Part shown: positions 1,451 through 54,336 of the stretch, piece by piece
Layout of the letters: each line of letters starts with the position of its first letter
Position numbering within the stretch: position 1 is the stretch's first letter
Origin: Octopus sinensis
Taxonomy: Eukaryota
Length of the DNA: 64,000 bases
Assembly: GCF_006345805.1 (NCBI RefSeq)
Contig: NW_021824954.1
Location: forward strand, 1-64,000
Direction of reading: 5' to 3'
The notes under the pieces: generated by a model
Told to the model about the DNA's origin: nothing
The model's input: only the letters and a program-made list of their open reading frames with translations
Databases searched by the model: none
Made by a program: the position numbers and the translations under genes

Positions 1451-3498
1451 CATCATCATCATCATCATCATTTAGCGTCCGCTTTCCATGCTAGCATGGG
1501 TTGGACGGGTCAACTGGGGTCTGTGAAACTGGAAGGCTTCGTCAGGCCCAGTCAGATCTGGCAGTGTTTCTACGGCTGGATGCCCTTTCTAACGCCAACC
1601 ACTCCGCGAGTGTAGTGGGTGTTTTTTACGTGCCACCTGCACAGGTGCCAGACAGAGCTGGTGAACGGCCACGAACGGATGGTGCTTTTACGTGTCACCG
1701 GCACGGGGCCAGGCGATGCTGGCAACGGACACGAATGGATGGTGCTTTTACGTGCCACCGACACGGGGCCAGACAGAGCTGGCAAACGGCCACGAACGGA
1801 CGGTGCTTTTACGTGTCACCGGCACGGGGCCAGGCGATGCTGGCAACGGACACGAACGGATGGTGCTTTTACGTGCCACCGACACGGGGCCAGACAGAGC
1901 TGGCAAACGGCCACGAACGGACGGTGCTTTTACGTGTCACCGGCACGGGGGCCAGCCGAGGCTGGCAACTGACGCGAACGGATGGTGCTTTTACGTGCCA
2001 CCGACACGGTTGCCAGACAGAGCTGGCAAACGGCCACGAACGGACGGTGCTTTTACGTGTCACCGGCACGGGGGCCAGCCGAGGCTGGCAACGAACACGA
2101 ACGGATGGTGCTTTTACGTGCCACCGACACGGGGGCCAGGCAGAGCTGGCAGACGGCCACGAGCGAATGGTGCTTTTACGTATCACCGGCACGGGTGCCA
2201 GACGAGGCTGACAGCGGACATGAACGGATGGGTCACTTAACCCCTGCTTTCTGATATATGATTTGATTTTGATTGTTCTCACTGGTCTTGCCGGGTCTTC
2301 TCACGCACAGCATACTTCCATAGGTCTCGGTCTCTGGTCATTTCCTTGGTGAGACCTAGAGTTCGAAGGTCGTGCTTCACCACCCTCGACCCAGGTTTTT
2401 CCTGGTCTACCTCTTCTACAGGTCCCCTCAACTGCCAGGGTGTGGCACTTTTTCACACACCTATCTTCATCCATTCTCACATGACCATACCAGCGCAATC
2501 GTCTCTCTTGCACACATCTGATGCCTCTTAGGTCCAACTTTTCTCTCAAGGTACTTACACTCTGTCGACTATGAACACTGACATTACACATCCAACGGAG
2601 CATACTAGCTTCATTTCTCGCGAGCTTACGCATGTCCTCAGCAGTCACGGCCCATGTTTCACTGCCATGTAGCATGGCTGTTCGTACACATGCATCATAC
2701 AGTCTGCCTTTTACTCTGAGCGAGAGGCTTTAGTCACCAACAGAGGTAGGAGCTCCCTAAACTTTGCCCAGGCTATTCTTACTCTAGCCGTTACACTTTC
2801 AGCACCCCACCCCCACTACTGACTTGGTCACCAAGATAATGGAAGCTATCAACTACTTCTAGTTTTTCCCCCTGGAAAGTGACGGAAGTTGTTTTCTGCA
2901 GATTCTCAGAGGTTAATGCTCCCGAGCATCTGCCACATACAAAAACCATCTTCCTAGTTAGCCTTCCTATGACATTGCTGCACCTCTTATGTGTCCATAG
3001 CTTACACTTGGTGCATCTTATAGAGTTTCTACCTACACCTTTTCTACAGATCGAGCAGGGCCAACTACCTGAAGGCGTTTGTGATTTGTCTACCTTCCTA
3101 CTTATTACGACTTTGGTTTTAGCTAGGTTGACTCTAAGGCCCTTCGATTCTAAACAATGCTTCAACACCTGAAACTTCTTCTCCAGTTCTGATAATGACT
3201 CAGCAATTAGAGCAAGGTCATCAGCATAGAGGAGCTCCCAGGGGCATCCTGTCTTGAATTCCTCCGTTATTGCCTGGAGGACTATGATAAATAGGAGGGG
3301 GCTGAGGACTGAGCCTTGGTGGACCCCTACCTCCACCCGGAATTCTTCACTGTACTCATTGCCAACCCTCACCTTACTAGCAGCGTCCCTGTACATGGCT
3401 TGCACAGCTCTCACTAACCATTCATCTATTCCTAGTTTCCTCATTGACCACCATATGAGGGATCGGGGGACCCTGTCGAAGGCTTTCTCCATGTCAAC
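1451..3498 (-). mobile_element. RTE LINE (PHD-in-RT family), 3' non-inverted part: RT C-half, PHD finger, 3'UTR VNTR, (GAT)n tail
   Basis: ORFs 2791-3492 (MEKAFDRVPRS...HQGSVLSPLLF...YADDL) and 2301-2675 (LHGSETWAV...RRLRWYGH). The (CAT)n tail on the plus strand is at 1451. Confidence 0.95.
1610..2240 (-). repeat. About 10 x 60-62 bp tandem repeat in the RTE 3'UTR, partly alternating two unit types
   Basis: GGTGCTTTTACGTG(C/T)CACC recurs at ~1618, 1681, 1741, 1802, 1862, 1923, 1984, 2046, 2107 and 2169. Confidence 0.95.
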
Positions 3499-7744: not shown

Positions 7745-8257
7745 CAGAAATTATTAAATAAATCTTTATTAAAATCATTTAGATAAAAAGTTCTGAAAAG
7801 AGGCTAATAGCCGCTTGTGGACTCCCCGACTGGATATCTGGTAGAAATCTTGGGATCATCTACTGCACCTTATTACTTAGCTTGACCTAAGCTTACACCT
7901 TTCTGAAAATAAAAGAATAATTTCTCAGCAATGCAAATTTATGAAACAAGGTAGGAAAATATAAAAGCAAAAGTTTCCACAGAAAAAGAAGTTAACTTAC
8001 AAATTTGCAGTACTTTCTCGGAGAGTCCAAACTGCACCTTCAGTCATCAAGGAAGCCAATCCACTTGGTCACTAAGACTGCATCTTGCTACAAAACCAAC
8101 TCCTGGAGCAAATAAGAAATACTAAGCATTAGATGCAGTTAGTAAAGAAACTGCAGTCCTTCCGAGATAATACTCCAGAAGGAAGACAAAATTCAAGTTT
8201 TTAATCACAACCGCTAAATTTGGTTTCTTTTTGGAGTACCAAATCGTTTTAGTATTG

Positions 8258-8298
<41 letters not shown>

Positions 8299-9803
8299 AA
8301 TCTAAAATGTTATCGAAATGAGCTTGTTGCTGACAAACAGCTTCCTTCACCAAATGGAAGTACAATCTGTTGAGCATGATCAAAATATATTTTTGGTTGT
8401 ATTATAAACGTATGCAAATGTTATGCTTACATGATGTTAAATGATTCACTAGTGTTTTCGTTTTTTTTTTTTTAAAGCTTCCCAAAAAAATAAGCTATGA
8501 ACTATGGAAAATTTCGACAAATCTACAAGTTGACAGTCGAACATTGATAAGACAAAAATACAAAGTGAAATGATCGACGTAAGGGACAAGCTAGAAAAGT
8601 TAATCCTACCTACTGAGCAGTAAGCTCAGTTGTATTCCCAATGGCTGTTCTCATTGCTCTCACCTATCAATCACCATTTCCCTGATGCAGTTCACATAGA
8701 TTGAAACTAGTTTCAAGTTGATAGTGTCAACCTTTACTTGATCTTCCTCATAGTCACCTAGCTTCCATGCTGTTCAGTAGTAGTAGTAGTAGGATAGGTA
8801 GAGGTAGTAGTGACAACTAGCATCGCATATGCCTCGTATAAACTGCTAAGGGCTAATCCTGAAATCTTAAGACCAGCTAAATTAGCAAGTTCTAGTTCAA
8901 AGAGCTGAAAATAAAGCAGGTTTAATACATTTAAAGTCATTTAAGACACTGAACTGTTTGTTAAATAATAGTTAAATAACACTAAGTCTTATGTAGATGT
9001 TTATATTAAACCATTGCTCAAGTTTCTAAAATGTTTTAAACTGACATTAAATCGTACATTTATGTTAGTACTACCAATTTCTTTTTATATTATAGTGGAG
9101 GCCTAATGCCTTTAGAATATACAATATATCAGATAAAGAATAAGTAAGTCATCCATACATTACCATTAATTAGGTTAAATTGAACCACCCAAGACTTATT
9201 ATATTACAGACAAATTCACACCTAATTAGTATATAGTCACTTACCTCAATTCCCCAGACATACTTAGAGTAGCGAAAGGCACTAAATGTACTGCTGACAA
9301 CTGCAAATAAGCTCATCTTATCTATCAAACAATACTTATGCCATATTGACCTGAAAAGTAGACTGGTACTGGGTGAAATGACAACAGTAGTAGTGTTGGT
9401 AATGGTTGTTGTTGTAGTAGTAGTAGTAGTAGTAGTATAAACAAGATGACTGACTGCCGACTGACTTACCTACCTACAAGGGTGGCTTACACTAAGATGC
9501 AGCAACCGGGAAGAAAGCAAAATTAAAATTCCCCCAGCACACCCACCTGGCATGCAAACAGTACAGAACTCATCCCTTTCAGCACCGACCTTACCACACA
9601 TGAAAAGGGGCTGGGTGGGGGATCAGGAGAAAGAACGGTAATTTTCATGGTCATGATCAGCTGAGAATAATGTGAAAACTAGGGATGGAACGAAAGTTAA
9701 AACAGACGGTGATAGGGCCATGTGTAAAAAAAAAATTACAGAAGCTCATGCAGAAAGTGGAAGCAAGAAAATCTAAATCGAGTTAATTCTAGAAATACTT
9801 ACC
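7745..9803 (-). other. Putative non-coding 3'UTR exons of the hnRNP A gene
   Basis: Donors TAG|GTAAGT (9803, 9470), GAG|GTAAGT (9245) and TTT|GTAAGT (8001). Acceptors CTTATTTGCAG| (9300), TTATTTGCTCCAG| (8102) and CTTTTATTTTCAG| (7902). Terminal AATAAA at 7765-7770. Exon 8001-8102 has stops in all three frames. Confidence 0.5.
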
Positions 9804-10955
9804 TAACACGAAACTAAACATGACACTAAGTTACTTAAAACAGTAAATCTGCTTGAGGCTAGGTGTATGACTACATCATAGTTCACGTGGTGACCAGCAG
9901 GTCAAAGTTCTGCTGTGATTGTTGATTACAAATACAGATGGTTGACCAGCAACTAATTTAGCGAAAAGTTTAGCAGTTATGAAGATATATACAAATTCAC
10001 TCATACATATAATTATACACACATACTATACATATATAACAGACACAGAATTAGCGACATGCCGACCAAGCAAGATACTAGACATTAACAAAACACGTCA
10101 ACTGTATATGGTGGGTGAGTCTAGTGAAAAGGTCGGAGGTTGGGGGAAAAGAAAAGTGGAGGTTTAAACGAGGTGGTAGGGATTAAGCAAAGTGAAGGTA
10201 AGAGGATGAGTGAAATTTAATAACCAAGTGGCGGCAACTGAAATACTGTTGAGGCTCTTAAACTATCTTGACTAACATGGAAAAAGACCAAACAGGAAAT
10301 GATAATACTATAAAAAAAAAAAACTAACCGACAATTTGTCTAGACAAAATGATGAAATCTAGTTCAAGTTTGTAAATTTTTTTATTTACAAGATACATCT
10401 CAACCAGCAAGTTTGCTGGGGGTAGCCGAAGATAAATGGCTGCTGCAACAGTATTTCATTGGAGTGGCCCTCACTTTCTACACTTAGTAGCTTCTAGTAG
10501 TAATTTTCCTGGAGAATCAACTATAAGACAGTGGCTGGATCAGGTCATAAAAGAATAGACAATTAAAACACGTAAGTTGGTTGGCTCATTTCCTTTTCTT
10601 CAGTAATTAAATTAGAAATTGTAAATAAGATGTAAAAGGGGGCGAAACTGACCATCACCAAAGCACTGCCTTTTGTTTAAAGTCCAAGTTACTCACCACT
10701 GGCTACTCCTTGACCCCTTTTTAAAAAATACATTTGAAAAAAATTGATTGTAGACTGAACTCTAAAAGTAAATTATTAAATAAAGTGTTTATTAGAGACT
10801 TCAATACATGTACTGTGGCCTGTATAAGGTTATTTCATGATATGAAGTGATAAGGGAGGAAAGAAAATGAAGTTACATAAGATGGAAAAAAAAGTACATA
10901 TGTCCATAAAGGAGAAAGCACTAGGTCTCTGATTTTATTTAGCATTATGATGGTG

Positions 10956-10994
<39 letters not shown>

Positions 10995-12049
10995 TATATA
11001 CACCCCAAGTTGTTAGTTTCTGTAGCAGAAATAAGAAAAAAACAACAAGCTGTCATCACCTTGCCTATGTCGACCATTTTAGAGAGAAACTTGTATCAGG
11101 TGGAACAAAGGACTAAACCAGCACCTCCCATTTCCATAAGAGACAATAGATTTCAGTCAAGTTTCCTAAGATCTCCATTCATTACAATATGTATAATACT
11201 AAGTTATTTATCATTTATTTTTTAAAGCTTTTTTTAAACATATCAAATTCCTGCACTTGTGATTTACCTAGATTTAGGTGGATGAATAAAAAAAAGTTTT
11301 TAAAAACTGACGTTGTCAGGACTGAGAAAGCGATGCGAACAAATGAGTGAACATGAAATATATCTAGAATAGTTAACCTACATTAATTATACCTAGATAT
11401 ATTCAATGCGTGTATGTTGTGAAAGAGAGACGATCAGACAAAGAATAATTTAAATAGGTGTTTTATGAATAAAAATAGTCTAAAATAAAGTTTCAATGAC
11501 AAAATGGCTTCTAATTGGATTGAGAACTTAGGCTGTGATGAGGAAGTAACATAAATATTGGTATACTGGTCTGGATAGCTGAATAGTAGTAATATAGTAG
11601 CTGAATCAACTAATCCTTCCTTAGTTTCTGGTAATAATGTCGAGATGCAACATAGATGAGCAGTTTTAAACATGTTTTGCTGTGATTATATATGAGATAC
11701 ATAAATGATAGTAATCAAATGTTTTTTTTTTTTGGTTTGTTCTTTTTTTGGCAGGTACAATTATTCTAAAAGATAAATAATAAAATTATATATATAATGG
11801 CATCAAAAGAATGTACTGAGAAGTGTTTTATATCATCAGACAGGGATATTACCTGGCCGTAGAAGTCCCGATGTGTTGCAGCTTTGTGTTACAGATGTAG
11901 GTGGATGAAGGAGATGGCTTGGCTGCTGTTGGATGTTGCTATTGATGATGGAAGATGTGGAATTTGATTTTCTCTATATTTTTCCTCTGGTGGGAGAGGC
12001 TTATGTGATATTGCTGGTGATGAAGGTTGTGTTCGTTTAGAAAAGCAAA

Positions 12050-13048
12050 TTACCGCCGATAGTTGCTGCCACTACCGTAGCCACTACCATAAGGGCCGCT
12101 ACCTCTGTTGAAACCACCACCACCACCACCACGAGTTGGTCCGCCGCCATTTCCGTAACTGTAACCAGTTCCGAAGTTGTTGTAGCCATCATTGAAGTCA
12201 CCGCCGCCGTAGCGGCCACCACCCATGCTGCCACCGTAGCCTCCGCCTCCATAGCCGCCCTGATTACCTCCGCCGTAGCCTTGTGGACCATTACCGCCGT
12301 AGCCCTGGGGTCCTCCAGCGTTGCCTTGATAGCCCATGTTACAATGGTATCCATAGTTGTCGTTGTAACCGCTGCCGTTTGCACCACCGAAGCCTCCGCG
12401 TCCTCCACCCATTCCACCACGCATACCACCGCCACCTCTTCCTCCACGGCCGCCGCCGATGCCCATTCCACCTTCACGATCCTTGGAGACAGCTTTTTTC
12501 ACTTCCACCATTTTCCCGTTGAGCGAGATGCGACGTTTAAGAACAACCTTGTCTACAGAGTCGAAGTCCTCATAGGTGATAAAACAGAATCCTCTTTGTT
12601 TGCCGGTTGCTTTATCTTTAATCATTTCCAGTTTTTCGATTTTGCCGAAACCACCGAAAGTATCCCGAATATCGTCTTCAGAAGTTTCCTCCTTCAATCC
12701 GCCGACGAACATTTTCTTCACTGATGTTTGTGTTTCGTCCGATTCATTACGAGGCATGGCTCTTTTTGTATCCAAATCACGATTATCAATTTTGTGAGGT
12801 CGGTTCTTCTGTGCATCATCTAACATTTCGGCGCATTTGTAAGTAATGAAACCGAATCCACGAGATCTTTTCGTGCTTGGGTTTTTCATTACGACACAGT
12901 CAACGATTTCGCCCCATTGTTCGAAGTGCTGTTTAATAACTTCTTCCGTCGTCTCATAGTTAAGACCGCCAATAAACAATTTGCGGAATTTTTCTGCTTG
13001 AGGATCATCACTATTCTCCTCTCTGTAGTTATAAAATCTTTCAGGCAT
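12050..13048 (-). CDS. HNRNPA1-like: Heterogeneous nuclear ribonucleoprotein A1/A2-B1 family protein (two RRMs plus Gly/Tyr/Asn-rich C-terminus), intronless CDS
   Basis: Intact 332-aa ORF. RRM1 has KLFIGGL and RSRGFGFITY; RRM2 has KKMFVGGL and KQRGFCFITY; RGG and GY-rich low-complexity tail. The exact paralogue cannot be assigned. Confidence 0.96.
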   Translation of the reverse strand: MPERFYNYREENSDDPQAEKFRKLFIGGLNYETTEEVIKQHFEQWGEIVDCVVMKNPSTKRSRGFGFITYKCAEMLDDAQKNRPHKIDNRDLDTKRAMPRNESDETQTSVKKMFVGGLKEETSEDDIRDTFGGFGKIEKLEMIKDKATGKQRGFCFITYEDFDSVDKVVLKRRISLNGKMVEVKKAVSKDREGGMGIGGGRGGRGGGGMRGGMGGGRGGFGGANGSGYNDNYGYHCNMGYQGNAGGPQGYGGNGPQGYGGGNQGGYGGGGYGGSMGGGRYGGGDFNDGYNNFGTGYSYGNGGGPTRGGGGGGFNRGSGPYGSGYGSGSNYRR

Positions 13049-13119
13049 TTTAAACGAATTACTTTAGCTTGTTTATTCAGCTGGTGTGTAGTAACGCAAA
13101 CGACTACTGTCAGAGAACA

Positions 13120-13210
13120 GCTAATAAGAGAGATACTCAAAATGGAGATATGCGTTAGGATAATCGGCTTAAGTATGGCAGCCTCGTATTGAACTAACCA
13201 ATCATGTTCG
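13120..13210 (-). promoter_or_regulatory. Probable TATA-less promoter and TSS region of the hnRNP A gene
   Basis: YY1/initiator-like CTCCATTTTG (13138-13147) and GGCTGCCATACTT (13171-13183), plus a CCAAT box at 13198-13202, all 90-150 bp upstream of the ATG. Confidence 0.5.
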
Positions 13211-13888
13211 CTTTTTTCAAACCCTTTGTTTTCCTCAAGCCATTGCAAGAAATAATTTCTATTAAATTTTTAAGATAGGAACTAAATCCATAAATATTTT
13301 ATTTATGTTATTCAAGAAAAAAGTTTTAGAAGCAATTTATAATGGAAGAATATGTGAAAATTAATTACCTTATAATTAGATACCGCGTCTTATACCCGTC
13401 TTCGTTGATATGCTTTGAACATGTATAATTTTTTTTGTGGGGGTAGGGCAGGTCTATTCAAATAGTATATACTTTTTATGCGAAGTTAATGCCTAATAAT
13501 GTGAAGATATTCATTTCTAATTATTTACTTAACTACTTTTAAAAATAAGTAAAAATACTCCAATAGGATACATCCTGCGTATGCATATGTGTATATATAT
13601 ATATACAGTGTGTGTATATACATTTGTGCATGTATGTTAATGAATGATTACATTTGTGTCCATGTACATATGTACACGTATATATATATATATATTATAT
13701 ATATATATATATACGTATATATATATATACATATATTTGGATATATGTTTATATATATATAATTGGGCAATAACTATATATATATATACAGTGTGTGTGT
13801 ATACATTCGTGTATGTATATATGTATGTTTATGAATGATTACATTTGTGTTTGTACATATGTATAGGTGTATATATAAATATATATAT

Positions 13889-14165
13889 AATTGGGTAATA
13901 ACTATATATAGTGTGTGTGTATACATTTGTGTATGTACATATGTATACGTATATATATATATACATACACATATATGTTAGAAGTATTGGGGATGATGTA
14001 CATATTTAAAACATGTAAGAAAAAGGCGTTGTTGAGGGCGCTACAAAATATGAAGAAATAATATGTGATATGTAAATAAATATATTTTTTTACAACCATC
14101 CAGTATTCTGAACACCTTTTTCTTTCATATATATATATATATATATATATTTCGATATACCTATG

Positions 14166-14213
<48 letters not shown>

Positions 14214-14497
14214 TATATATAATTGGGTAATAACTATATATAGTGTGTGTGTATACATTTGTGTATGTACATATGTATACGTATATATATATATACATAC
14301 ACATATATGTTAGAAGTATTGGGGATGATGTACATATTTAAAACATGTAAGAAAAAGGCGTTGTTGAGGGCGCTACAAAATATGAAGAAATAATATGTGA
14401 TATGTAAATAAATATATTTTTTTACAACCATCCAGTATTCTGAACACCTTTTTCTTTCATATATATATATATATATATATATTTCGATATACCTATG

Positions 14498-14541
<44 letters not shown>

Positions 14542-14829
14542 TATATATATATAATTGGGTAATAACTATATATAGTGTGTGTGTATACATTTGTGTATGT
14601 ACATATGTATACGTATATATATATATACATACACATATATGTTAGAAGTATTGGGGATGATGTACATATTTAAAACATGTAAGAAAAAGGCGTTGTTGAG
14701 GGCGCTACAAAATATGAAGAAATAATATGTGATATGTAAATAAATATATTTTTTTACAACCATCCAGTATTCTGAACACCTTTTTCTTTCATATATATAT
14801 ATATATATATATATTTCGATATACCTATG

Positions 14830-14873
<44 letters not shown>

Positions 14874-14937
14874 TATATATATATAATTGCGGAATAACTA
14901 TATATATATATAAATATATATATATATAATTGCGGAA

Positions 14938-14980
<43 letters not shown>

Positions 14981-14993
14981 GCGGAATAACTAT

Positions 14994-15028
<35 letters not shown>

Positions 15029-15065
15029 ATTGCGGAATAACTATATATATATATATATATATAAT

Positions 15066-15103
<38 letters not shown>

Positions 15104-15118
15104 ATTGCGGAATAACTA

Positions 15119-15160
<42 letters not shown>

Positions 15161-15172
15161 GCGGAATAACTA
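13889..15172. repeat. 3 x 332-bp tandem repeat followed by 6 x AATTGCGGAATAACT-(TA)n units
   Basis: Long units start at 13889, 14221 and 14553. Short units start at 14885, 14928, 14977, 15028, 15103 and 15157. Confidence 0.95.
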
Positions 15173-16261
15173 TATATATATATTTATATATAGATATGTG
15201 TGTGTGTATAAATATATATATATATATATATTACATACGCAGTAAAAGTGTTTAAATTTTTAGTCTAGATTTTTATTTCCTCTCTGTTACGACTTCTTCA
15301 TTTGTCGTTTATATATCATACTCACTTCTCTCAATTGATAAAGTCAATGAAGGTGACGAGATTTTCGCGGCAGCCATATTTAAACTTCGTAACATGCCAT
15401 GACTTGGAACAGAAATGGAAAACGATAGTAGTACAAGAAAGCGTCTTATATTTCTCCTTTAATTTTACGTTTCGGATTAGATTTATACATTTAACGGCAC
15501 AATAAAGCATTATATAGGAAATATAGATAGAATTTAAAAGAAAAAGATGAATTTCTTTCAGTTGAATTTTCGAAATTGAAAATTATCAATAAAGAAGTCG
15601 GGTATTATTAATCTTAATTTACATTTTATCCGAAAAAAAACTTTACTGTATTGAGTATACATATATATATATTTCGAAGAGGAAGAGAATTAAGAATGTA
15701 GTAGAATCTAATATATCTTCTAAGAAATATTTGGAAACATACTAAATTGCTTTAGTATCTTGTGCGAAAAATTTTGTTATGCACACAGCCTTATATATAT
15801 ATATATTATTAATATTACTAAATTATATATTATATGTGATATATATATATATATATATAATTTTAAAAAGATTGTTGACTCATAACTTCCAGAAAAATGG
15901 ATACTTATTGGGGGATACACATCTGTAGTTATGCCTATATATGTACATATACTGTATATATAATGCATATATATACACATAAATACGAATGTGTATGTAT
16001 ATATATTACACGCATGTGTATATATATATGTACACACGATTATATCACATACGCGTGCGTATGTATGTATATACATACACATCTAAAAACATTACGTTCG
16101 AAATGATTAAGATTCAATGTTCAGTACTCGGATTAACACGTGCATTAAAAAGAAGGGAGTCAGGATTTCGACAGAAACTTATTTATTTATCGTTTTGGTC
16201 TCTTTCGAAGATCCATCATAAATAATTTCTTGTAGAGAAGTCATACCTTTTTTTTTTTAAT

Positions 16262-17619: not shown

Positions 17620-20600
17620 CTAGCAGAGCTACCCGGCATTGCCCAGTTACATTCATTTGAAGAATTAGACTTTTCTGTTATATATATATATATATATATG
17701 GATACACACAAACACACACACATATATATGTATATTAGTATAAATACATGAAAGTACATGAAGTTTGTTAAAAAAAAAAGGGGATCATGTATATACCTCC
17801 TGGCTGTTGAGATTATAACACCTAGTTGTAAACAATGTTCCTTGTTTTTCCTTGTGGAGCATATACAAAAAGGTTTCTTTTGGTTCCTACTCTTGAGCAG
17901 CCAAAATACAGTTGCCCATGTGAGAAGCAGGGCTGTTTCAAGAGAAGACCAGCTACAGAGAGGGTTTGACCCTGAGATTTGTTAATGGGCATGGCAAAGC
18001 TGACACGAAGGGGGAATTGCAGTCTTCTGAATGTAAAAGGAATTTCTGCTCCTGATGGAGTAAGAGGAATTCTTGGAATAAAGACGTCATCACCTTTTCC
18101 ACATCCAGAAAGAATGATCGCCTCGATAATGTGTGACATCATTTTCTTTATCACCAGTTGTGTTCCATTGCAAAGTCTTGGTGGTTCCAGATTGCGGAGT
18201 AGCATTACAGGAGTTCCAACTTTAATTGCTAATATGTGTGGAGGCAGTCCACGAGGCTCCAGTGAATTGTGAAATTCAGGAGGATAGTTCACAACTTCAT
18301 TTATATCTGGAATTGTATCAACAGACTTGTAAGTGTGTATAGTGCCGGGAAGAGAATGCATTAGCTGTTGATTAATTTTGTTAACATCAACGTTTTTTGG
18401 AGCTAATCTTGCTCTTTCACACAGCCAATTGTGATTTTGGTAGTTTTGTGTGAAGTTGGGAGAGACTTTGTTTTTTGAGGTCATCTACAGAATTAACAAC
18501 AGAAGAAAATGACCACACTTCCATTTGTCCTGCAGCATCGAGAAGCATCTTACCTTCACCAAGTGTCAAAATGTCCTGTGCAAACTTTGTGGACATTTTG
18601 TCACTGTGTAGCTGAGCTCTCATGTTAGTGGTGAGACTGTGGATTGTAACATGATGCCACAGTGTAGAGGACTTTAGTGCCTTTCGGAATGACAGGAAGA
18701 ATTTGCCTGAAATCACCTGACAACAGAAGCGTTACACCTCCCATTGGAGCCTGACAGCCTCAGATGTCTTTCAGGGCTCTATCTAATGCTTCCAAAGATC
18801 CCCTGTGAGCCATAGTGCACTCATCCCAGACAATTAGATGACACATTTTAAGTACTTGTCCCTGATCTGAGCTTTTGTTGATGTTGCATGAAGGCATTTC
18901 GGATGTTGCTAAATTGAGAGGGAGTTTAAAAGTTGAGTGTGCTGTCCTGCCACCGGGTAACAAAGTAGCTGCAATGCCAGAGGAGGCTACAGCTACTGCA
19001 ATGTCCTGATGCCGCCTAACGTCTGCAAGGAGAAGCTTTGTAATAAATATTTTCCTGTCCCTCCAGGAGCATCGAGGAAGAAGATTCGTCCCTCGCGTTG
19101 GCGTACACTGTTAAAAATAGTTCTGTAGGCCTGCAGCTGGTCAGGAAGTAATTTAGGCTCATTTTCAACAATGTACTTTGAAAGCGCTTGAGTGTCGTAG
19201 GTTGTTTCACGAATGACAGCAGTGGGAAGGCTATTTGACCCTGACCTGAATGCTTGTGGCAGCCCATACGTCAACAATTCATTTCCACCCAGTTTAGCAA
19301 TTCTGTCTTCAATGTCAATGAGTGTTTTGTTATAGATTTCATTGCTGATACCCTCCATGTCAGGATAAAGCAGTTGAGCTTGGCGCTGAAAGTCTTCAGC
19401 CAGGTTGTTTCTATATTTGAGCCATAGAGTGGCCGGATCACACAGTCCGCATGCCTGTAGTAATACTGCAAATAGTGCCCTAAGACTTTTAGGTGATTGT
19501 GATAATGCAGCCTCTCCTAAAGTTGCATCCCATTGTGCACCATCTTCTAACAGAGCTTGTCGATAGCAGGCTTCTGTGTATGTTGTGCAGACATGTCCAT
19601 GAATGGTTTTTAGGGCCTGGAAAGACGTTGGCCCTCTGATCTCATGCAGTAGTAGACGAAGGTAGAAGCACTCTTGTTGAGTGGGATGCACTGTGTATAC
19701 TCGTCCAAGGCAAGTGTGAAACTTAATGCCAGGGTATCCATGAACATTTTGACCTGCTTTCCGTGGGGCCCATTTTTTTTCCATTCCAAGTGTAGTATGA
19801 TGGAATCTGTGGATGTGGATACAGCAAGGTTTGAGTGAATGGATTCACTTCACAAAGCTTGAAGAATGCAGTGAGTGTGCTATCCCTTTGTTCCTCTGCC
19901 AACAGAGAAGCATTAGCATCGGGGAAGTACACTCTTTGACCATTTTCCAGGTGCACTGCAAGCTGTTGAATGGCGAGGTGTCGTTGGTGAATTGGAAAGC
20001 CAAAGATGCACCAGAAAGCCTCGTTGCTACTTATGTACCGTCCCACCTGATAAAGCGTCACCTCATCCTGGCAGTATTCTTGTTGAAGTCCAAACATTGC
20101 AGCGTCAGAACCCTTGTTTACATATTTGCAAACATACTTGATGGATATTATCAATATCGTGTTGTCCGATAGTTGCTGTGAAACCTCCGTCTTCTGGTTT
20201 TCTGCGTCTGTATGATGGATACCCATCAGCACCTGTCTGAGTTTCTTGTAGGAACCTCCTTCGAAATCTTTTTGAATATATGCTGTCCTTCAAGCATGGT
20301 GTGTTTATGTTGAATCCACGCCCACATAGACCATGTAACATGTTTGCTTTATTTTGTATAGTTCTTTGTCTAAAGCTGGATCAGGAAGCTCTGCAGAGAT
20401 TATCTTGTCGATGTCATTGGAATTGATCTTCGCTGAGAGCCAAAGCAGGTTATGAGCATGTGGAAGGCCCCTTTTTTGCCACTCGATTGTGTACATGTCA
20501 CATTGTATGGGCCCAAAGACTTGCCCTTTTTGTACGACCTCCATGAGAGAGATTAACATCAGATGGAAAACTCGGGCGTTGAGATTCCGGTTCGAATGTA

Positions 20601-45735: not shown

Positions 45736-48700
45736 TATATATATATATATACATATATATATCATCATCATCATCATCATCATTTAGCGTCCGTTTTCCA
45801 TGCTAGCATGGGTTGGACGGTTCTATTGGGGTCTGTGAAGCCAGAAGGCTTCATCAGGCCCAGTCAAATCTGGCAGTGTTTCTACGGCTGGATGCCCTTC
45901 CTAACGCCAACCACTCCGTGAGTGTAGTGGGTGCTTTTTACGTGCCACCCGCACTGGTGCCAGACAGAGCTGGCAAACGGCCACGAACGGATGGTGCTTT
46001 TTATGTACCACCGGCACGAGGGCCAGGCGAGGCTGGCAACGGACACGAAACGGGGCGGTGCTGGCAACGGTCGCGAAACGGAAAGTTCTCTTACATGCCA
46101 CCGGCACTGGTAACACATCTGCAATTTCCATTGATCGATTTCGATTCTGATCCTCACTTGCCTCAATGGTCTTCACAAGCAGAGTTTCGACATGCCACCG
46201 GCACTGGTAGCACATCCGCAATTTCCATTGATCGATTTCGATTCTGATCCTCACTTGCCTCAACACGTCTTCACAAGTAGAGTTTTGTGTCCCAAGAAGG
46301 GAAGGTATGCATACGTAGGCTGGCTCCATCCCATGTAGAAGGCCACGGGTTGTGGACTCACTTGTCCTGCCGGGTCTTCTCGCGCACAGCACACTTCCAG
46401 AGGTCTCGGTCTCTAGTCATTTCCTCAGTGAGACCTAAAGTTCGAAGGTCGTGCTTCACCACCTCGTCCCAGGTTTTCCTGGGTCTGCCTCTTCCATAGG
46501 TTCCCTCAACCGCTAGGGTGTGGCACTTTTTCACACAACTATCTTCATCCATTCTCGCCACATGACCATACCAGCGCAAACGTCTCTCTTGCACACCACA
46601 ACTGATGCTTCTTAGGTCCAGCTTTTCTCTCAAGGTACTTACACTCTGCCGAGTGTGAGTACCGGCATTACACATCCATCGGAGCATACTGGCTTCATTT
46701 CTAGCGAGCTTACGCATATCCTCAGCAGTCACGGCCCATGTTTCACTGCCATGTAGCATGGCTGTTCGTACACACGCATCATACAGTCTGCCTTTCACTC
46801 TGTGCGAGAGGCCTTTTGTCACCAGCAGAGGTAAGAGCTCTCTGAACTTTGCCCAAGCTATTCTTACTCTAGCAGTTACACTTTCAGCACACCCACCCCC
46901 GCTGCTGACTTGGTCACCTAGGTAACGGAAACTATCAACTATTTCTAGTTTTTCTCCCTGGAAAGTGACGGAAGTTGGTCTCAGAGCATTTTCAGTGTTT
47001 ATTGTTCCTGAGCATCTGCCACATACAAAAACCATCTTCCTAGTTAGCCTTCCTTTGACATTGCTGCATCTCTTATGTGTCCATAGCTTACACTTGGTGC
47101 ATCTTATAGAGTTTCTACCTACACCTTTTCTACAGATCGAGCAGGGCCATCTACCTGAAGGTGTTTGTGATTTGTCTACCTTCCTACTGATTACGACTTT
47201 GGTTTTAGCTAGATTGACTCTGAGGCCCTTCGATTCTAATCCTTGTTTCCACACCTGAAACTTCTCCTCCAGTTCTGATAGCGACTCAGCAAAGAGCAAG
47301 GTCATCAGCATAGAGGAGCTCCCAAGGGCATCCTGTCTTGAATTCCTCCGTTATTGCCTGGAGGACTATGATAAATAGGAGGGGGCTGAGTACTGAGCCT
47401 TGGTGGACCCCTACCTCTACCCGGAATTCTTCACTGTACTCATTTCCAACCCTCACCCTACTAGCGGCGTCCCTATACATGGCCCGCACAGCTCTCACTA
47501 ACCATTCATCTATCCCTAGTTTTCTCATTGCCCACCAGATAAGGGATCGGGGGACCCTGTCGAAGGCTTTCTCCATGTCAACAAAAGCCAGGTACAGGGG
47601 CTTATCTTTGGCTAGGTATTTCTCCTGCAGCTGCCTTACCAGGAATATAGCATCAGTAGTACTTTTCCCTGGCACAAACCCAAACTGCATCTTATCTAAA
47701 CTAACTCTCTCTCTAATTAGTTGGGCTATGACCCTCTCCGTAACCTTCATCACCTGGTCCAACAGCTTGATACCTCTGTAGTTATTTGTATCTAGGGCAT
47801 CACCTTTGCCTTTGTAGCAGTTGACTATTATACTGCTACACCAGTCATTGGGTATGACCCCTTTGTGTATCACCTGATTAACTATATGGGTGACTAGGCT
47901 ATAGCCGACACTACCAGACATTTTGAGCATCTCTGCAGTGATCCTGATGGGCCTGGGGCTTTCCCTGTCTTCATGCTTCTAATTGCCTTAGCTACCACAG
48001 AACTATCAACTCGGATAGCTGGTCCCTCTGTTGGGTCAACATTCGGCAGACTCTCTTTATCCCATTCATTTTCTTCATTCAGCAACCTTTCATAGTGGCA
48101 TCTCCAAACCTCTCTCTTCGCATCCTCATTTAGCGCAAGTGAACCATCTTCCATGCGAACACACTTCTCTCCTACCACATCACGATTCTCTCTCAAACAC
48201 TGTCTTGCAACACGAAACACCTCCAGTCTTTGGTCCTCACGGCGCAGAACATTGGCAAATTTTTTCTTATCTGCTTCCCCTCTGGCTAAATAAACCTGTC
48301 TCCTAGCTTCTCTTTTGGCAGTCTGATACAATTCCCTGCTACCCCCATTTTTCCAGACCTTCCAAGCCTGTCTCTTTTCTCTAATAGCCCTGTCTACAAT
48401 ATTGTTCCACCACCACGTTATTCTAGGTCGAGAGGGGACTTTGCACCAGCCACAGATCTGGTCAGTGGCTCTCAGCAGGTTGTCCCTTAGAAACGTCCAG
48501 CTGTCTTCTACCCCCTGTGATGCTCTATCCCCTTCTACTTCGTCAGAGGCTTCAAGTAATATGTCCCTAAATCTCTGTCCATTTGCAGGATCTTTAAGCT
48601 TCCAGATCCTTCTTCTCCATATTTGTCGTCTTCTGGTTGTCCTCCTAGTCCTGATCCTAAAGTCACTAACTACCAGTCTATGTTGTGGGGTACATTCTTC

Positions 48701-49696
48701 ACCTGGGAAGGTTTTGGCATTTATAAGCAGCCATCTCTCCCTTTGCCTTGTAAGGATGTAGTCAATTTGGCTGGTATGTTGGCCCGATTGGTAAGTGACT
48801 AGGTGGCTGGTAGGTTTCCTGAAGTTAGTGTTGCAAATCATAAGATTATTTGCATCGCAGAACTCCAGCAGCCTGGTTCCCTCCTCGTTGCGGGAGCCAT
48901 AGCCATAGCCTCCATGTACGCCATGGAAGCCCCCAGCATGTCGTCCAACGTGACCATTGAAGTCACCAGCCACAAAGATAAGGTCTCTGTCGTTCGTCAA
49001 TGAGGTAGTCTGCAGTAGAGTGTCATAGAATCGGTCTTTCTGTCCATCGGGTAGCCCCGACTGAGGAGCATAGGCTGATATAATGGTTGCTAAACATATG
49101 ATGAAGCACTAATCTAATCTTAAGTATTCTGTCACTTACTCTGATTACCTCAATTACTTTATCTACCCATTTCTCAGCGATAAGTATACCCACGCCACCA
49201 CAACCCCGTCAGTGTTCCCTGCCCAGAAAATCTTGTACCTGCGTTCCTTGCCTGTGAGGAACCTAGCTGATCCTCCTCTCCACCTTATTTCTTGCATGCA
49301 ACATATATCACACATCTCCGTTCAAGCATCTCGACTATCTCACCAGACCTACCTTTCAGAGTGCCAACGTTGAGGGTGCCAACCCTGAGGGTGTGGAAGG
49401 CATGGGCTCTAGAGACCCTGGGACGGTGGACAGTAGCTTCGTGTACCTGAAAAGAAAGCTCGCATTTGGCAGAATTCATGTGCAAGAAATGAAGTAGTAA
49501 AGTAGCCTTCAGTACAACCTGCATAACGCTAGCCTTTCATATTTTGCACTGTATGAACATTACCTTACATAGGTCGAGACTAGGGGTAGGGAGGGGTATG
49601 GATGGTGAGAGCATTTGCAGTCTTCATGGGAAGCAACCCCGGAATGGAAGAGAATAGGAACTTCCGGCATGCGTGGTGGGGGTGGGAGGGCGGGTG

Positions 49697-53900: not shown

Positions 53901-54308
53901 TACTAGGATTACTGTTTTCGACGTCGCTAAAAAGGGCTCCAGGTTCCGAAAAAAACCCGTCTGTCTACCCTCGTTCGGGGCGTAGACAGCTACCAACCTG
54001 AAGGACTGTTTACTTACGTGAGTCACATCCAGGACAACCAGCCTGCCTTCTGGATCCAGAAAGACAGTACTTACCTGCAAGTCCAAGCTCTTCCTGATGA
54101 AGACTGCCACGCCTCTGCCTCTTCCTCGGCTAGGAGAAATAAATTTCTCGAAACCATTTAGAAGAGGCGAGAACGCTTGGGTCTCGCTCATCTTGGACTC
54201 GGTTGCAATAGCAATATCTACACCATGTGTCGTGAGGTCGTTCAGGAAACAAATTTGTTTCCGTTTCGACCCCATTCCACGTACATTTATACAACCCAGC
54301 TTAGCCAT
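50920..54308 (-). CDS. Tx1 ORF2 (APE + RT + C-terminal CCHC), one 1-nt frameshift at ~51790
   Basis: LGCINVRG, VYAPN, VGDFN and SYLDRIF (APE); KSPGLDG, NYRPITLLN, RQGCPLSPLL and YADD (RT); CPRCELDDETVQHAFVHC. Confidence 0.92.
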
Positions 54309-54336
54309 TGTAGGTTAGAGAGAAAAATGAATGTAC

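What the first reader, a model, noticed from the sequence alone, without database searches (positions are those of the whole stretch)
7745..12049. hnRNP A gene with an intronless CDS but an apparently multi-intron, non-coding 3'UTR: candidate splicing-NMD autoregulation module
Seen: a donor CAG|GTAATA lies 197 nt downstream of the stop codon (11853). Same-strand donors follow at 10697, 9803, 9470, 9245 and 8001, with pyrimidine-rich acceptors defining short exons (9245-9300, 8001-8102) and a terminal exon (7902 to AATAAA 7765). Exon 8001-8102 has stops in all three frames. About 7.2-13.4 kb is nearly free of the TEs that fill the rest of the window. Known: a junction more than 50-55 nt downstream of a stop can trigger EJC-dependent NMD, and mammalian HNRNPA2B1 is autoregulated through 3'UTR splicing. 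Inference: unspliced transcripts ending at AATAAA 11214 or 10788 are productive, and spliced ones are NMD-sensitive. Caveat: GTAAGT is only modestly enriched over AT-rich background.
Basis: partly seen in the sequence, partly recalled or inferred. Interest (0 to 1): 0.72.

Follow-up and report, generated by a model that had tools for sequence, protein, structure and literature searches.

The report
Octopus hnRNP A gene's spliced 3'UTR
An octopus RNA-binding-protein gene (hnRNP A type) with an uninterrupted coding exon has a real, alternatively spliced 3' untranslated region whose layout and several non-coding elements are shared by octopuses, an argonaut and cuttlefish or squid; it looks like a self-regulating switch of a kind known from human hnRNP A2/B1 and TDP-43, but that function has not been tested.

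Summary
The window is Octopus sinensis contig VCDQ01003425.1. A 332-aa hnRNP A1/A2B1-type protein is encoded by one uninterrupted ORF (13048-12050, minus strand).

The donor CAG|GTAATA at 11853, 197 nt past the stop, is really used. An octopod RNA contig joins 11853 to 8102. An annotated O. vulgaris isoform translates exactly (269/269) from window exons joined at 12343|11925 and 11853|8102.

The same layout is found in Argonauta, cuttlefish and another decapodiform: a donor 84-212 nt after the stop, a 3.75-4.0 kb intron, a 102-138 nt exon, a roughly 100 nt intron and a terminal exon. A 32-nt donor core is invariant.

Inside the large intron, one AATAAA (10788) and two blocks (9392-9180 and 8927-8587) are far better conserved than synonymous sites.

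A polyadenylated cuttlefish mRNA retains the large intron but has the small intron spliced out.

Transcripts support only two 3'UTR introns. The donors at 10697, 9803, 9470 and 9245 are conserved but not shown to be used.

NMD sensitivity, self-regulation and its direction remain inference. I file it as a new member of a known kind.

The parts
12050..13048 (-). Uninterrupted CDS of a 332-aa hnRNP A1/A2B1-type protein (2 RRMs, a Gly-rich tail with RGG repeats, and ...RGSGPY).
   Evidence: ORF. Pfam RRM_1 x2, E=2e-35. Best PDB matches are human hnRNP A1 (7e-69) and A2/B1 (5e-58). The CDS is also contiguous in O. bimaculoides, Argonauta and S. pharaonis genome loci.
13049..13149 (-). 5'UTR, minimum extent. 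No 5'UTR intron was seen.
   Evidence: RNA contig L004 aligns colinearly from 13149 and has 28 more diverged bases 5' of that.
11853..12049 (-). 3'UTR segment between the stop and the first 3'UTR donor (197 nt).
   Evidence: Present in L003, L004 and L005.
11831..11862 (-). Invariant 32-nt donor core CTACGGCCAG|GTAATATCCCTGTCTGATGATA. The 5' splice site is suboptimal (U at +5, A at +6).
   Evidence: The 29-nt core CTACGGCCAG|GTAATATCCCTGTCTGATG is identical in O. sinensis, O. bimaculoides, Argonauta, S. pharaonis and octopod L017; the full 32 nt is identical in the four genome loci. Squid-like L006 has a 3-nt insertion in the core and a substitution just after it.
8103..11852 (-). Large alternative 3'UTR intron (3750 nt, GT..AG).
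   Evidence: It is spliced out in L005 and in the O. vulgaris model CAI9737578.1. The homologous 4.0-kb intron is spliced in S. pharaonis models and in L007, and retained in the polyadenylated cuttlefish mRNA L020.
11926..12342 (-). In-CDS intron ('exitron', 417 nt, ATT|GTAACA...AACAG|C). It removes the distal Gly-rich tail and the stop codon.
   Evidence: Deduced from the exact match of the spliced translation to O. vulgaris CAI9737578.1. This is gene-model evidence only. S. pharaonis models have a different exitron (L027 10928-11043).
10766..10816 (-). Conserved internal poly(A) signal context ATGTATTGAAGTCT(C)TAATAAACAC.TTATTTAATAA; AATAAA is at 10793-10788.
   Evidence: It is the only internal PAS hexamer conserved in all four genomes. 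The block 10930-10740 is 99/84/71% identical to O. bimaculoides/Argonauta/Sepia. No transcript was found ending here.
10691..10697 (-). 5' splice-site-like G|GTGAGT about 90 nt downstream of the conserved PAS.
   Evidence: Conserved as AAG|GTGAGTAAC in Sepia and disrupted by a 4-nt deletion in Argonauta. Its use is not shown.
9180..9392 (-). Conserved block A, which contains the candidate 56-nt cassette 9300-9245 (..TTTGCAG|TTGTCAGC...TTGAG|GTAAGTG) and a more conserved flank of about 90 nt upstream.
   Evidence: Mismatches are 0/210 vs O. bimaculoides, 5% vs Argonauta and 17% vs Sepia. 4-fold sites differ by 17/44/69%. An 8-nt length difference in Sepia argues against coding. No transcript shows inclusion.
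8587..8927 (-). Conserved block B, with three UAGGU(G/A) motifs (8760, 8666, 8612) conserved to Sepia.
   Evidence: Mismatches are 0/341 vs O. bimaculoides, 8% vs Argonauta and 25% vs Sepia.
8610..8624 (-). Homologue of a 15-nt micro-exon (GAG|CTTACTGCTCAGTAG|GTAGGA) used in a S. pharaonis gene model.
   Evidence: P0126 residues AYCSI map to L027 14591, which aligns to this site. Gene-model evidence only.
8001..8102 (-). Non-coding 3'UTR exon (102 nt, stops in all frames).
   Evidence: Acceptor use is shown by L005 and CAI9737578.1. Positional homologues are 138 nt in S. pharaonis and 108 nt in L007. The sequence evolves about neutrally.
7903..8000 (-). Short terminal 3'UTR intron (98 nt, T|GTAAGT...TTTTCAG|A).
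   Evidence: GT and AG are conserved in O. bimaculoides and Argonauta. The homologous 101-nt intron is spliced out in cuttlefish mRNA L020 and retained in L007. No octopus junction read was obtained.
7745..7902 (-). Terminal exon with the distal AATAAA (7770-7765).
   Evidence: The high-identity block with O. bimaculoides ends at about 7726. Cuttlefish L020 ends with AATAAA plus a non-templated poly(A) tail at the homologous place.

Best explanation
This is the 3' control region of a coleoid hnRNP A1/A2B1-type gene.

Shown:
- One coding exon is followed by a 3'UTR with two introns: 11852-8103 and 8000-7903.
- The first intron starts at an invariant, deliberately weak 5' splice site 197 nt after the stop, and it is alternatively removed.
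- The layout is shared by octopods and decapodiforms.
- The large intron carries one deeply conserved AATAAA and two deeply conserved non-coding blocks rich in conserved UAGGU motifs and splice-site-like sequences.

Inferred mechanism: the gene's output is set by competition among three fates of the pre-mRNA.
1. Cleavage at the internal poly(A) site (10788) gives a junction-free, translatable mRNA.
2. Read-through to the distal site with the large intron kept gives a long-3'UTR or 'detained-intron' RNA.
3. Removal of the large intron puts exon junctions 197 and 299 nt downstream of the stop, which would mark the mRNA for EJC-dependent NMD.

The hnRNP A protein itself, whose RRMs are conserved with human A1 (a UAGG binder), is proposed to bind the conserved UAGGU clusters and shift this choice. 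That would give negative feedback, as in human HNRNPA2B1 and TARDBP.
For: Junction 11853|8102:
- It is present in RNA contig L005.
- O. vulgaris isoform CAI9737578.1 equals the window exons joined at 12343|11925 and 11853|8102 (269/269).

Conserved layout:
- The same donor is spliced in decapodiform contig L007 and in the S. pharaonis models. It is unspliced in L003, L006, L008-L010 and L012-L016.
- Stop-to-donor distances are 84-212 nt in six species.
- The donor core is invariant.
- The cuttlefish 5.5-kb mRNA L020 retains the large intron, has the small intron spliced out and carries a poly(A) tail.

Constraint:
- The large intron has 3.1% mismatch to O. bimaculoides, against 16.9% at 4-fold sites of the same gene (p=7e-6).
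- Blocks A and B have 0/551 mismatches to O. bimaculoides, 5-8% to Argonauta and 17-25% to Sepia, against 44% and 69% at 4-fold sites.
- AATAAA 10788 is the only internal PAS conserved in all species.

Motifs:
- G|GTRAGT occurs 4 times vs 0.37 expected.
- TAGGT occurs 11 times vs 5.1 expected (6/500 shuffles). Nine are kept in Argonauta and four in Sepia. TAGGTAGG occurs twice vs 0.05 expected.

Precedents:
- HNRNPA2B1 3'UTR AS-NMD autoregulation with a very highly conserved 3'UTR (PMC3091714).
- TARDBP 3'UTR intron splicing coupled to alternative poly(A) sites and NMD (PMC4509932).
Against: - No transcript ending at an internal poly(A) site was recovered. Contig ends there are homopolymer breaks.
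- The long intron-retaining cuttlefish mRNA also carries a spliced junction far downstream of the stop, yet it is abundant enough to assemble in several libraries. So a 3'UTR junction alone may not doom the RNA.
- EJC-dependent NMD has not been shown in molluscs and is weak or absent in Drosophila and C. elegans (my knowledge).
- TAGG as such is not enriched (15 vs 13.6), and TAGGG is absent on the sense strand.
- The UAGGU motifs overlap 5' splice-site consensus, so they may be U1 sites rather than hnRNP A sites.
- No covariation supports any RNA structure.
- The octopus evidence for the spliced form is one short contig from a mislabelled run plus one gene model.
Confidence: 0.5

Rival explanations
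1. Reverse polarity. The fully spliced mRNA, with a compact 3'UTR of about 440 nt, is the productive form. Retention of the 3.75-kb intron is the off-state, through nuclear detention or decay triggered by the long 3'UTR. The protein would repress splicing at the weak donor.
For: The polyadenylated, otherwise spliced, intron-retaining mRNA L020 fits the definition of a detained intron. Human HNRNPA1 is reported to autoregulate by inhibiting splicing of its intron 10, independently of NMD (Suzuki and Matsuoka 2017, as cited in PMC8068773). The functional constraint lies inside the intron, not in the spliced-in exons. In invertebrates NMD often depends on 3'UTR length rather than on the EJC (my knowledge).
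Against: Unspliced contigs dominate the assemblies in several species and libraries. That is unexpected if the unspliced form is the unstable or minor one, though nuclear detained RNAs can be abundant. A conserved internal PAS is not needed in this model.
Confidence: 0.28
2. The conserved blocks are ordinary long-3'UTR control elements (localisation, translation, microRNA or other RBP sites, for example for neurons). They would be unrelated to feedback by the gene's own product, and splicing or alternative polyadenylation simply makes isoforms with or without them.
For: The blocks sit in a bona fide polyadenylated mRNA in cuttlefish. TAGG is not enriched overall. Nothing here links the protein to its own RNA.
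Against: The conserved sequences are dominated by splice-site-like and PAS motifs: AG..GTAAGTG, UAG|GUGAG, UAG|GUAGG and AAUAAA. The donor core is invariant. RBP genes with this architecture are typically auto- or cross-regulated (PMC3091714).
Confidence: 0.15
3. The main purpose of the splicing is to make protein isoforms: the exitron plus downstream exons give a truncated Gly-rich tail with a new C-terminus.
For: The O. vulgaris (269 aa) and S. pharaonis (389 and 406 aa) gene models encode such products. This is analogous to the short TDP-43 isoforms (PMC11848802 appeared in the search but was not read).
Against: Exitron positions differ between octopus and cuttlefish. The new C-termini are unrelated (SAKPSPSS...SWFCSKMQS vs EPNHLISIRIRY.../VSGISGGDVF...). 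The downstream exons evolve neutrally and carry stops in all frames. The evidence is gene models only.
Confidence: 0.05
4. The splice-like motifs are chance matches in AT-rich DNA, and the junctions belong to another transcript.
For: GTAAGT alone is only modestly enriched.
Against: L005 and CAI9737578.1 physically link the hnRNP coding exon to exon 8102. The sites are conserved as far as decapodiforms. L020 shows a single transcript from the 5'UTR to the distal poly(A) tail.
Confidence: 0.02

Closest known systems
Human HNRNPA2B1 3'UTR AS-NMD autoregulation (McGlincy et al. 2010, PMC3091714)
   Same: Same protein family. Both have an alternatively spliced intron in the 3'UTR far enough past the stop to trigger NMD, and a 3'UTR far more conserved than expected. 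Feedback by the protein is proposed here and demonstrated there.
   Different: The human CDS has many introns, whereas this one has none. Homology of the 3'UTR introns was not tested because no vertebrate sequence was available here. Here the intron is 3.75 kb, holds a conserved PAS, and is followed by a second short intron. NMD and feedback are untested.
TARDBP (TDP-43) 3'UTR intron / alternative poly(A) autoregulation (PMC4509932)
   Same: In both, the Gly-rich C-terminus and a long 3'UTR lie in one exon, and a 3'UTR intron encloses the proximal poly(A) site. Additional donors inside the Gly-rich coding part give truncated isoforms. Self-binding sites in the intron are known for TDP-43 and proposed here.
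   Different: It is a different RBP family, with UG-repeat sites rather than the UAGGU motifs seen here. TDP-43 has upstream coding introns. The mechanism here is only inferred.
Human HNRNPA1 intron-10 autoregulation (Suzuki and Matsuoka 2017, cited in PMC8068773)
   Same: Same family. The protein acts on splicing of a 3'-terminal intron of its own pre-mRNA.
   Different: There, retention is the unproductive state and NMD is said not to be involved. This is the basis of the reverse-polarity rival.
Ultraconserved 'poison' cassette exons and elements in SR and hnRNP genes (Lareau 2007 and Ni 2007, as cited in PMC3091714)
   Same: Block A is a short AG..GTAAGTG unit with even better conserved flanks. 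It lies in a splicing-factor gene and is non-coding, which is the classical signature.
   Different: It lies downstream of the stop, so it cannot introduce a premature stop. It could only add a junction or act as a decoy. Inclusion has not been observed.
Detained introns (Boutz et al. 2015; my knowledge)
   Same: The cuttlefish transcript is polyadenylated and has its neighbouring intron spliced, but keeps this one conserved intron. The gene class (RBP) also fits.
   Different: Nuclear localisation and delayed splicing have not been tested.

Membership tests
hnRNP A/B (A1, A2/B1, A3) protein family | Two tandem N-terminal RRMs with conserved RNP1 and RNP2 motifs | tested here: met
   Pfam RRM_1 x2, E=2e-35. 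Best PDB matches are human hnRNP A1 (7e-69) and A2/B1 (5e-58) over residues 14-192. The motifs KLFIGGL/RGFGFITY and KMFVGGL/RGFCFITY are visible.
hnRNP A/B (A1, A2/B1, A3) protein family | Gly-rich low-complexity C-terminus with RGG repeats and a PY-type nuclear import signal | tested here: met
   Read directly from the sequence: GGGRGGRGGGGMRGG... and ...FNRGSGPYGSGY. The full-length human A1 match extends to residue 323. Function as an NLS was not tested.
AS-NMD autoregulated RNA-binding-protein genes | Alternative splice junction more than 50-55 nt downstream of the termination codon | tested here: met
   Junction 11853|8102 lies 197 nt past the stop and is alternatively used: L005 is spliced, L003 reads through. 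Distances are 84-212 nt in five other cephalopods.
AS-NMD autoregulated RNA-binding-protein genes | The spliced isoform is stabilised when NMD is blocked | not testable with these tools
   Needs cycloheximide treatment or UPF1 knock-down, followed by RNA-seq or qPCR.
AS-NMD autoregulated RNA-binding-protein genes | The gene's own protein shifts the splice or poly(A) choice | not testable with these tools
   The only support is indirect: TAGGT 11 vs 5.1 expected, 4 conserved to Sepia, and TAGGTAGG 2 vs 0.05.
AS-NMD autoregulated RNA-binding-protein genes | Unusually high conservation of the non-coding region involved | tested here: met
   Blocks A and B have 0/551 mismatches vs O. bimaculoides and 17-25% vs Sepia, where 4-fold sites differ by 69%.
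TDP-43-type switch (3'UTR intron enclosing the productive poly(A) site) | A functional poly(A) site inside the alternative 3'UTR intron | tested here: inconclusive
   AATAAA 10788 and its context are conserved in all four genomes. No transcript with a non-templated tail at that site was recovered.
Detained intron | A polyadenylated transcript with its other introns removed but this intron retained | tested here: met
   Met in cuttlefish only. L020 is colinear with the S. pharaonis genome through the 4-kb intron, has the 101-nt intron removed, and ends in AATAAA plus a poly(A) tail. Octopus and nuclear retention were not tested.
Retrogene (processed copy) | Intronless CDS when the parental or family genes are multi-exon | tested here: inconclusive
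   The CDS is contiguous in four cephalopod genomes. The cephalopod paralogues P0012 and P0026 could not be fetched. The one paralogue that was fetched (Argonauta P0118) is itself intronless.
Retrogene (processed copy) | Poly(A) remnant and target-site duplications at the copy's ends | tested here: inconclusive
   An A-rich tract lies at 11760-11720, with counterparts in squid and Sepia. No target-site duplications were sought. The gene predates the octopod-decapodiform split, so such marks should have decayed.

The most novel reading that the evidence does not exclude
A coleoid-wide 3'UTR switch has been frozen in an intronless hnRNP A gene. Its age is set by the octopod-decapodiform split, roughly 250-300 Myr by my knowledge of published estimates. 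The switch would consist of an invariant weak donor, an embedded poly(A) site, a 56-nt decoy or poison unit, and UAGGU clusters.

The gene may have begun as a retrocopy of the intron-retaining, proximal-poly(A) mRNA of a multi-exon parent. That would have carried the family's autoregulatory donor with it while it lost all coding introns. If so, retroposition can transmit a splicing-based feedback circuit, and the hnRNP A 3'UTR intron would be a bilaterian-old regulatory device.
Probability: 0.12. Interest if true: 0.8.

Novelty: new member of a known kind. Interest (0 to 1): 0.5.

Why it matters
Feedback control of splicing factors through unproductive 3'UTR splicing, tied to ultraconserved non-coding DNA, is well documented in vertebrates but hardly at all in lophotrochozoans. 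Here the same signature appears in cephalopods. Its elements are conserved across the deepest coleoid split at a distance where synonymous sites are saturated.

This gives three things:
- concrete, testable non-coding elements for cephalopod RNA biology, a group noted for heavy post-transcriptional regulation;
- a natural test of whether EJC-dependent NMD operates in molluscs;
- a case for asking whether such circuits are ancestral or convergent.

Practically, it also warns annotators that the alternative C-terminal 'isoforms' in the octopus and cuttlefish gene sets are probably non-productive transcripts.

Tried and rejected
- **Rfam** at E<=1 on 5-15 kb gave only low-complexity (TA/CA) hits to mir-297/466-type models, far below gathering scores. 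There is no snoRNA or miRNA in the intron.
- **RNAalifold** on the donor region and on blocks A and B gave weak energies and essentially no compensatory changes. The 4-bp CAGG/CCUG hairpin over the donor is unsupported.
- **Motifs.** TAGG and TAGGG enrichment is absent. Only TAGGT and TAGGTAGG stand out.
- **Proximal poly(A) evidence.** The contig ends of L006, L009-L016, L023 and L024 lie at genomic homopolymer runs, so I rejected them as evidence.
- **Paralogue gene structure.** P0012 and P0026 are not on record. Argonauta P0118 turned out to be another intronless copy without the donor motif.
- **Metagenome scans** for JGI squid-like transcripts, one by protein and one by donor motif, both found nothing.
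- **Coding potential of block A** is rejected: Sepia has an 8-nt length difference and there are stops in one frame.
- **Literature.** I found no paper describing this locus or cephalopod hnRNP 3'UTR splicing.
- **Species of the SRA runs.** Only SRR16213284 was traceable, and it is labelled as a mealybug.


Full report
**What the window is.** The 332-aa ORF at 13048-12050 (minus strand) is found verbatim on Octopus sinensis contig VCDQ01003425.1, and window coordinates equal contig coordinates. The protein has two RRM_1 domains (E=2e-35). Its best solved relatives are human hnRNP A1 (7e-69, matching to residue 323) and A2/B1 (5e-58). NCBI names its O. bimaculoides orthologue 'hnRNP A1, A2/B1 homolog'. 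The CDS is one uninterrupted ORF here. It is also uninterrupted in the genome loci of O. bimaculoides (L002), Argonauta hians (L028) and Acanthosepion (Sepia) pharaonis (L027, up to residue 309 of the gene model, and on through the normal stop). The intronless coding exon is therefore older than the octopod-decapodiform split.

**Checking the observation.** The stop-to-donor distance is 197 nt, and exon 8102-8001 is closed in all three frames. Strong donors of the form G|GTRAGT occur four times on the sense strand of 12049-7745, against 0.37 expected from dinucleotide shuffles (1 of 500 shuffles reaches four) and 0.4 from the rest of the window. GTRAGT alone is 5 vs 2.1. The interval of roughly 5.1-13.6 kb holds no copy of the LINE/RT, Pif1-helicase-like or SINE-like families found elsewhere in the window.

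**Direct evidence for splicing in octopods.**
- Logan contig L005 is colinear with the window from 13086 to the donor. It then continues, 100% identical, into 8106-8077. Allowing for the shared CCAG, the junction is ...ACGGCCAG|GAGTTGGTTTTG..., that is 11853 joined to 8102 at canonical GT..AG.
- The sister contig L004 stops exactly at the donor, as expected for an assembly-graph branch.
- L003, which carries the O. bimaculoides protein, reads through the donor unspliced.
- Independently, the annotated O. vulgaris isoform CAI9737578.1 (269 aa, found among the cluster members) is reproduced residue for residue when the window exons 13048-12343, 11925-11853 and 8102... are joined.
- That model therefore uses the 11853|8102 junction. 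It also uses an in-CDS intron (12342-11926, 417 nt) that deletes the end of the Gly-rich tail and the stop codon.
- Caveat: L004 and L005 come from runs that a paper lists as mealybug RNA-seq. The contigs are 95.8% identical to O. bimaculoides, so they are octopod RNA, presumably carried over from another library.

**The layout is coleoid-wide.**
- Transcripts of the orthologue from cuttlefish and from a second decapodiform carry the same donor (P0004/P0128 cluster, which includes S. pharaonis HNRNPA1_3; and P0003).
- The 32-nt core CTACGGCCAG|GTAATATCCCTGTCTGATGATA is identical in O. sinensis, O. bimaculoides, Argonauta and S. pharaonis; its first 29 nt are also identical in octopod L017. L006 has a 3-nt insertion in the core and a substitution just after it. 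The rest of the proximal 3'UTR cannot be aligned.
- Contig L007 is spliced at that donor into a 108-nt exon, which is followed by a retained short intron.
- The S. pharaonis gene models use the donor after L027:11109, a 4.0-kb intron, an exon 15136-15273, a 101-nt intron and a terminal exon.
- Stop-to-donor distances are 197, 203, 212, 207, 95 and 84 nt in six species, all beyond the 50-55 nt rule.
- The 5.5-kb cuttlefish contig L020 starts 137 nt upstream of the ATG and is colinear with the S. pharaonis genome through the whole 4-kb intron. It lacks the short intron and ends in AATAAA plus a tail of As that the genome does not encode. The intron-retaining form is thus a mature polyadenylated RNA, and it still carries one 3'UTR junction.

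**Conservation.** I used 4-fold degenerate sites of the RRM region of the same gene as a local neutral yardstick. Against O. bimaculoides, Argonauta and S. pharaonis, O. sinensis differs at 17%, 44% and 69% of those sites.
- The large intron as a whole differs from O. bimaculoides at only 3.1% (p=7e-6). The flanks outside the transcription unit are 8-18% different with many gaps, and the high-identity block ends at about 7726, just past the distal AATAAA.
- Three islands survive to cuttlefish: the AATAAA-10788 context, block A (9392-9180) and block B (8927-8587).
- Their mismatch rates are 1/16/29% for the PAS block, 0/5/17% for block A and 0/8/25% for block B. Blocks A and B are thus better conserved than the coding sequence itself (4/15/24%).
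- By contrast the exons that are actually spliced in (8102-8001 and 7902-7745) evolve at about the neutral rate (43% vs 44% in Argonauta). What is conserved there is position and the GT/AG dinucleotides, not sequence.

**What the conserved islands contain.**
An 8-nt length difference in Sepia rules out coding. No transcript shows inclusion.
- Block B holds three UAGGU(G/A) motifs (8760, 8666, 8612) at positions conserved to Sepia. It also holds the homologue (8624-8610) of a 15-nt micro-exon used in one S. pharaonis model.
- Over the whole 3' region TAGGT occurs 11 times against 5.1 expected (6/500 shuffles). Nine are conserved in Argonauta and four in Sepia. TAGGTAGG occurs twice against 0.05 expected. 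TAGG alone is not enriched.
- AATAAA 10788 is the only internal PAS hexamer kept in all four genomes. AATAAA 11214 is Octopus-only.
- About 90 nt downstream of 10788 lies G|GTGAGTAAC, which is kept in Sepia and damaged in Argonauta.
- Donors 9803 and 9470 are kept in Argonauta and cannot be aligned in Sepia.

**Mechanism.** Three things are shown: an alternatively removed 3'UTR intron that starts at an invariant weak donor, a second short 3'UTR intron, and strongly constrained elements inside the large intron. The rest is inference.
- My preferred reading is a homeostatic switch. Cleavage at the embedded PAS gives a junction-free mRNA. Read-through with retention gives a long or 'detained' RNA. 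Removal of the intron puts junctions 197 and 299 nt after the stop and makes an NMD target.
- The gene's own product, or its paralogues, would act on the UAGGU clusters. This copies what is documented for human HNRNPA2B1, which has a highly conserved 3'UTR, a spliced form that rises 3.5-fold on UPF1 knock-down, and over-expression that shifts isoforms (PMC3091714).
- It also copies TARDBP, where 3'UTR intron removal is coupled to distal poly(A) use and NMD, and where there are extra donors within the Gly-rich coding part (PMC4509932).
- The chief rival is the opposite polarity: spliced means productive and retention means off. That is what is reported for HNRNPA1 intron 10 (cited in PMC8068773). 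It would be favoured if molluscan NMD does not read exon junctions.
- The sequence cannot decide between the two. I put about 0.5 on the first, 0.28 on the second, and the rest on non-autoregulatory 3'UTR function or protein-isoform production.

**Origin.** An uninterrupted CDS in a family whose members are normally multi-exon (my knowledge) suggests an ancient retrocopy or wholesale intron loss.
- I could not fetch the multi-exon paralogues.
- The one paralogue I did obtain (Argonauta P0118) is another intronless copy. It has an A-run about 85 nt after its stop and no donor motif.
- An A-rich tract 60-130 nt after the donor is shared by octopus, squid and Sepia.
- The idea that the gene descends from a retrocopied intron-retaining mRNA, carrying the regulatory donor with it, is not excluded but is unsupported.

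**Novelty.** The splice junctions are already implicit in public gene models: O. vulgaris CAI9737578.1, S. pharaonis CAE1164076/79, and several O. bimaculoides RefSeq records with the same protein. I found no paper that describes the architecture or its conservation. Mechanistically it belongs to a well-known class, so I file it as a new member of a known kind. It is moderately interesting because of the depth of non-coding conservation, the TDP-43-like layout within an hnRNP A gene, and the handle it gives on NMD rules in molluscs.

Noticed in passing
L004, L005 (Logan SRR16213285, SRR16213284): SRR16213284, the run that yielded L005 (its sister run SRR16213285 gave L004), is listed in PMC13340311 as Planococcus ficus (mealybug) RNA-seq from Mexico. 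The contigs are nevertheless 95.8% identical to O. bimaculoides. This is probably cross-library carry-over from an American Octopus species.
   Followed up: partly
L029:6001-6864 (Argonauta hians BAAFZT010000056.1): A second hnRNP A-like gene (P0118, 287 aa) is also intronless. It lacks the conserved 3' donor and has an A10 run about 85 nt after its stop, so it looks like a retrogene.
   Followed up: partly
window 13800-14763 (and TA/CA-rich 13570-15300): Three tandem copies of a 332-bp unit (90% identical), embedded in TA/CA microsatellite, lie just upstream of the gene's promoter region. Most of it does not align to O. bimaculoides. It produces spurious mir-297/466 Rfam hits.
   Followed up: partly
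window 50920-55461 (-), 2791-3492 (-), 46358-49000 (-): There is a near-complete LINE-type element: an 843-aa ORF with endonuclease and RVT_1, flanked by zf-RVT and zf-CCHC ORFs. There are also older RT/PHD fragments that repeat one another within the window.
   Followed up: partly
window 17822-19784 (-): Two ORFs hit the Pif1 helicase domains (PF21530, PF05970). They may be a Helitron-type remnant.
   Followed up: no
window 17407, 23631, 28965, 32210, 44840 (about 90-250 nt each): A SINE-like dispersed repeat family (core ...TTTCAGTCATTTGACTG.GGCCATGCTGGAGCAC...) has five or more copies. None lies within the gene.
   Followed up: no
window 11720-11760 (-), L006:~1385-1400, L027:~11150-11180: An A-rich tract lies 60-130 nt downstream of the conserved donor in octopus, squid-like and cuttlefish sequences. 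Its meaning is unknown; it could be an old poly(A) remnant or an A-rich element.
   Followed up: no
L027 (S. pharaonis) 10928-11043; window 12342-11926: Public gene models in cuttlefish and O. vulgaris contain different in-CDS introns that remove the stop codon and create unrelated, non-conserved C-termini. These are likely non-productive transcripts annotated as protein isoforms.
   Followed up: partly
L028:19083-19502 (Argonauta): A histone H2A gene lies about 8 kb downstream of the Argonauta orthologue. I did not look for a counterpart in the window.
   Followed up: no
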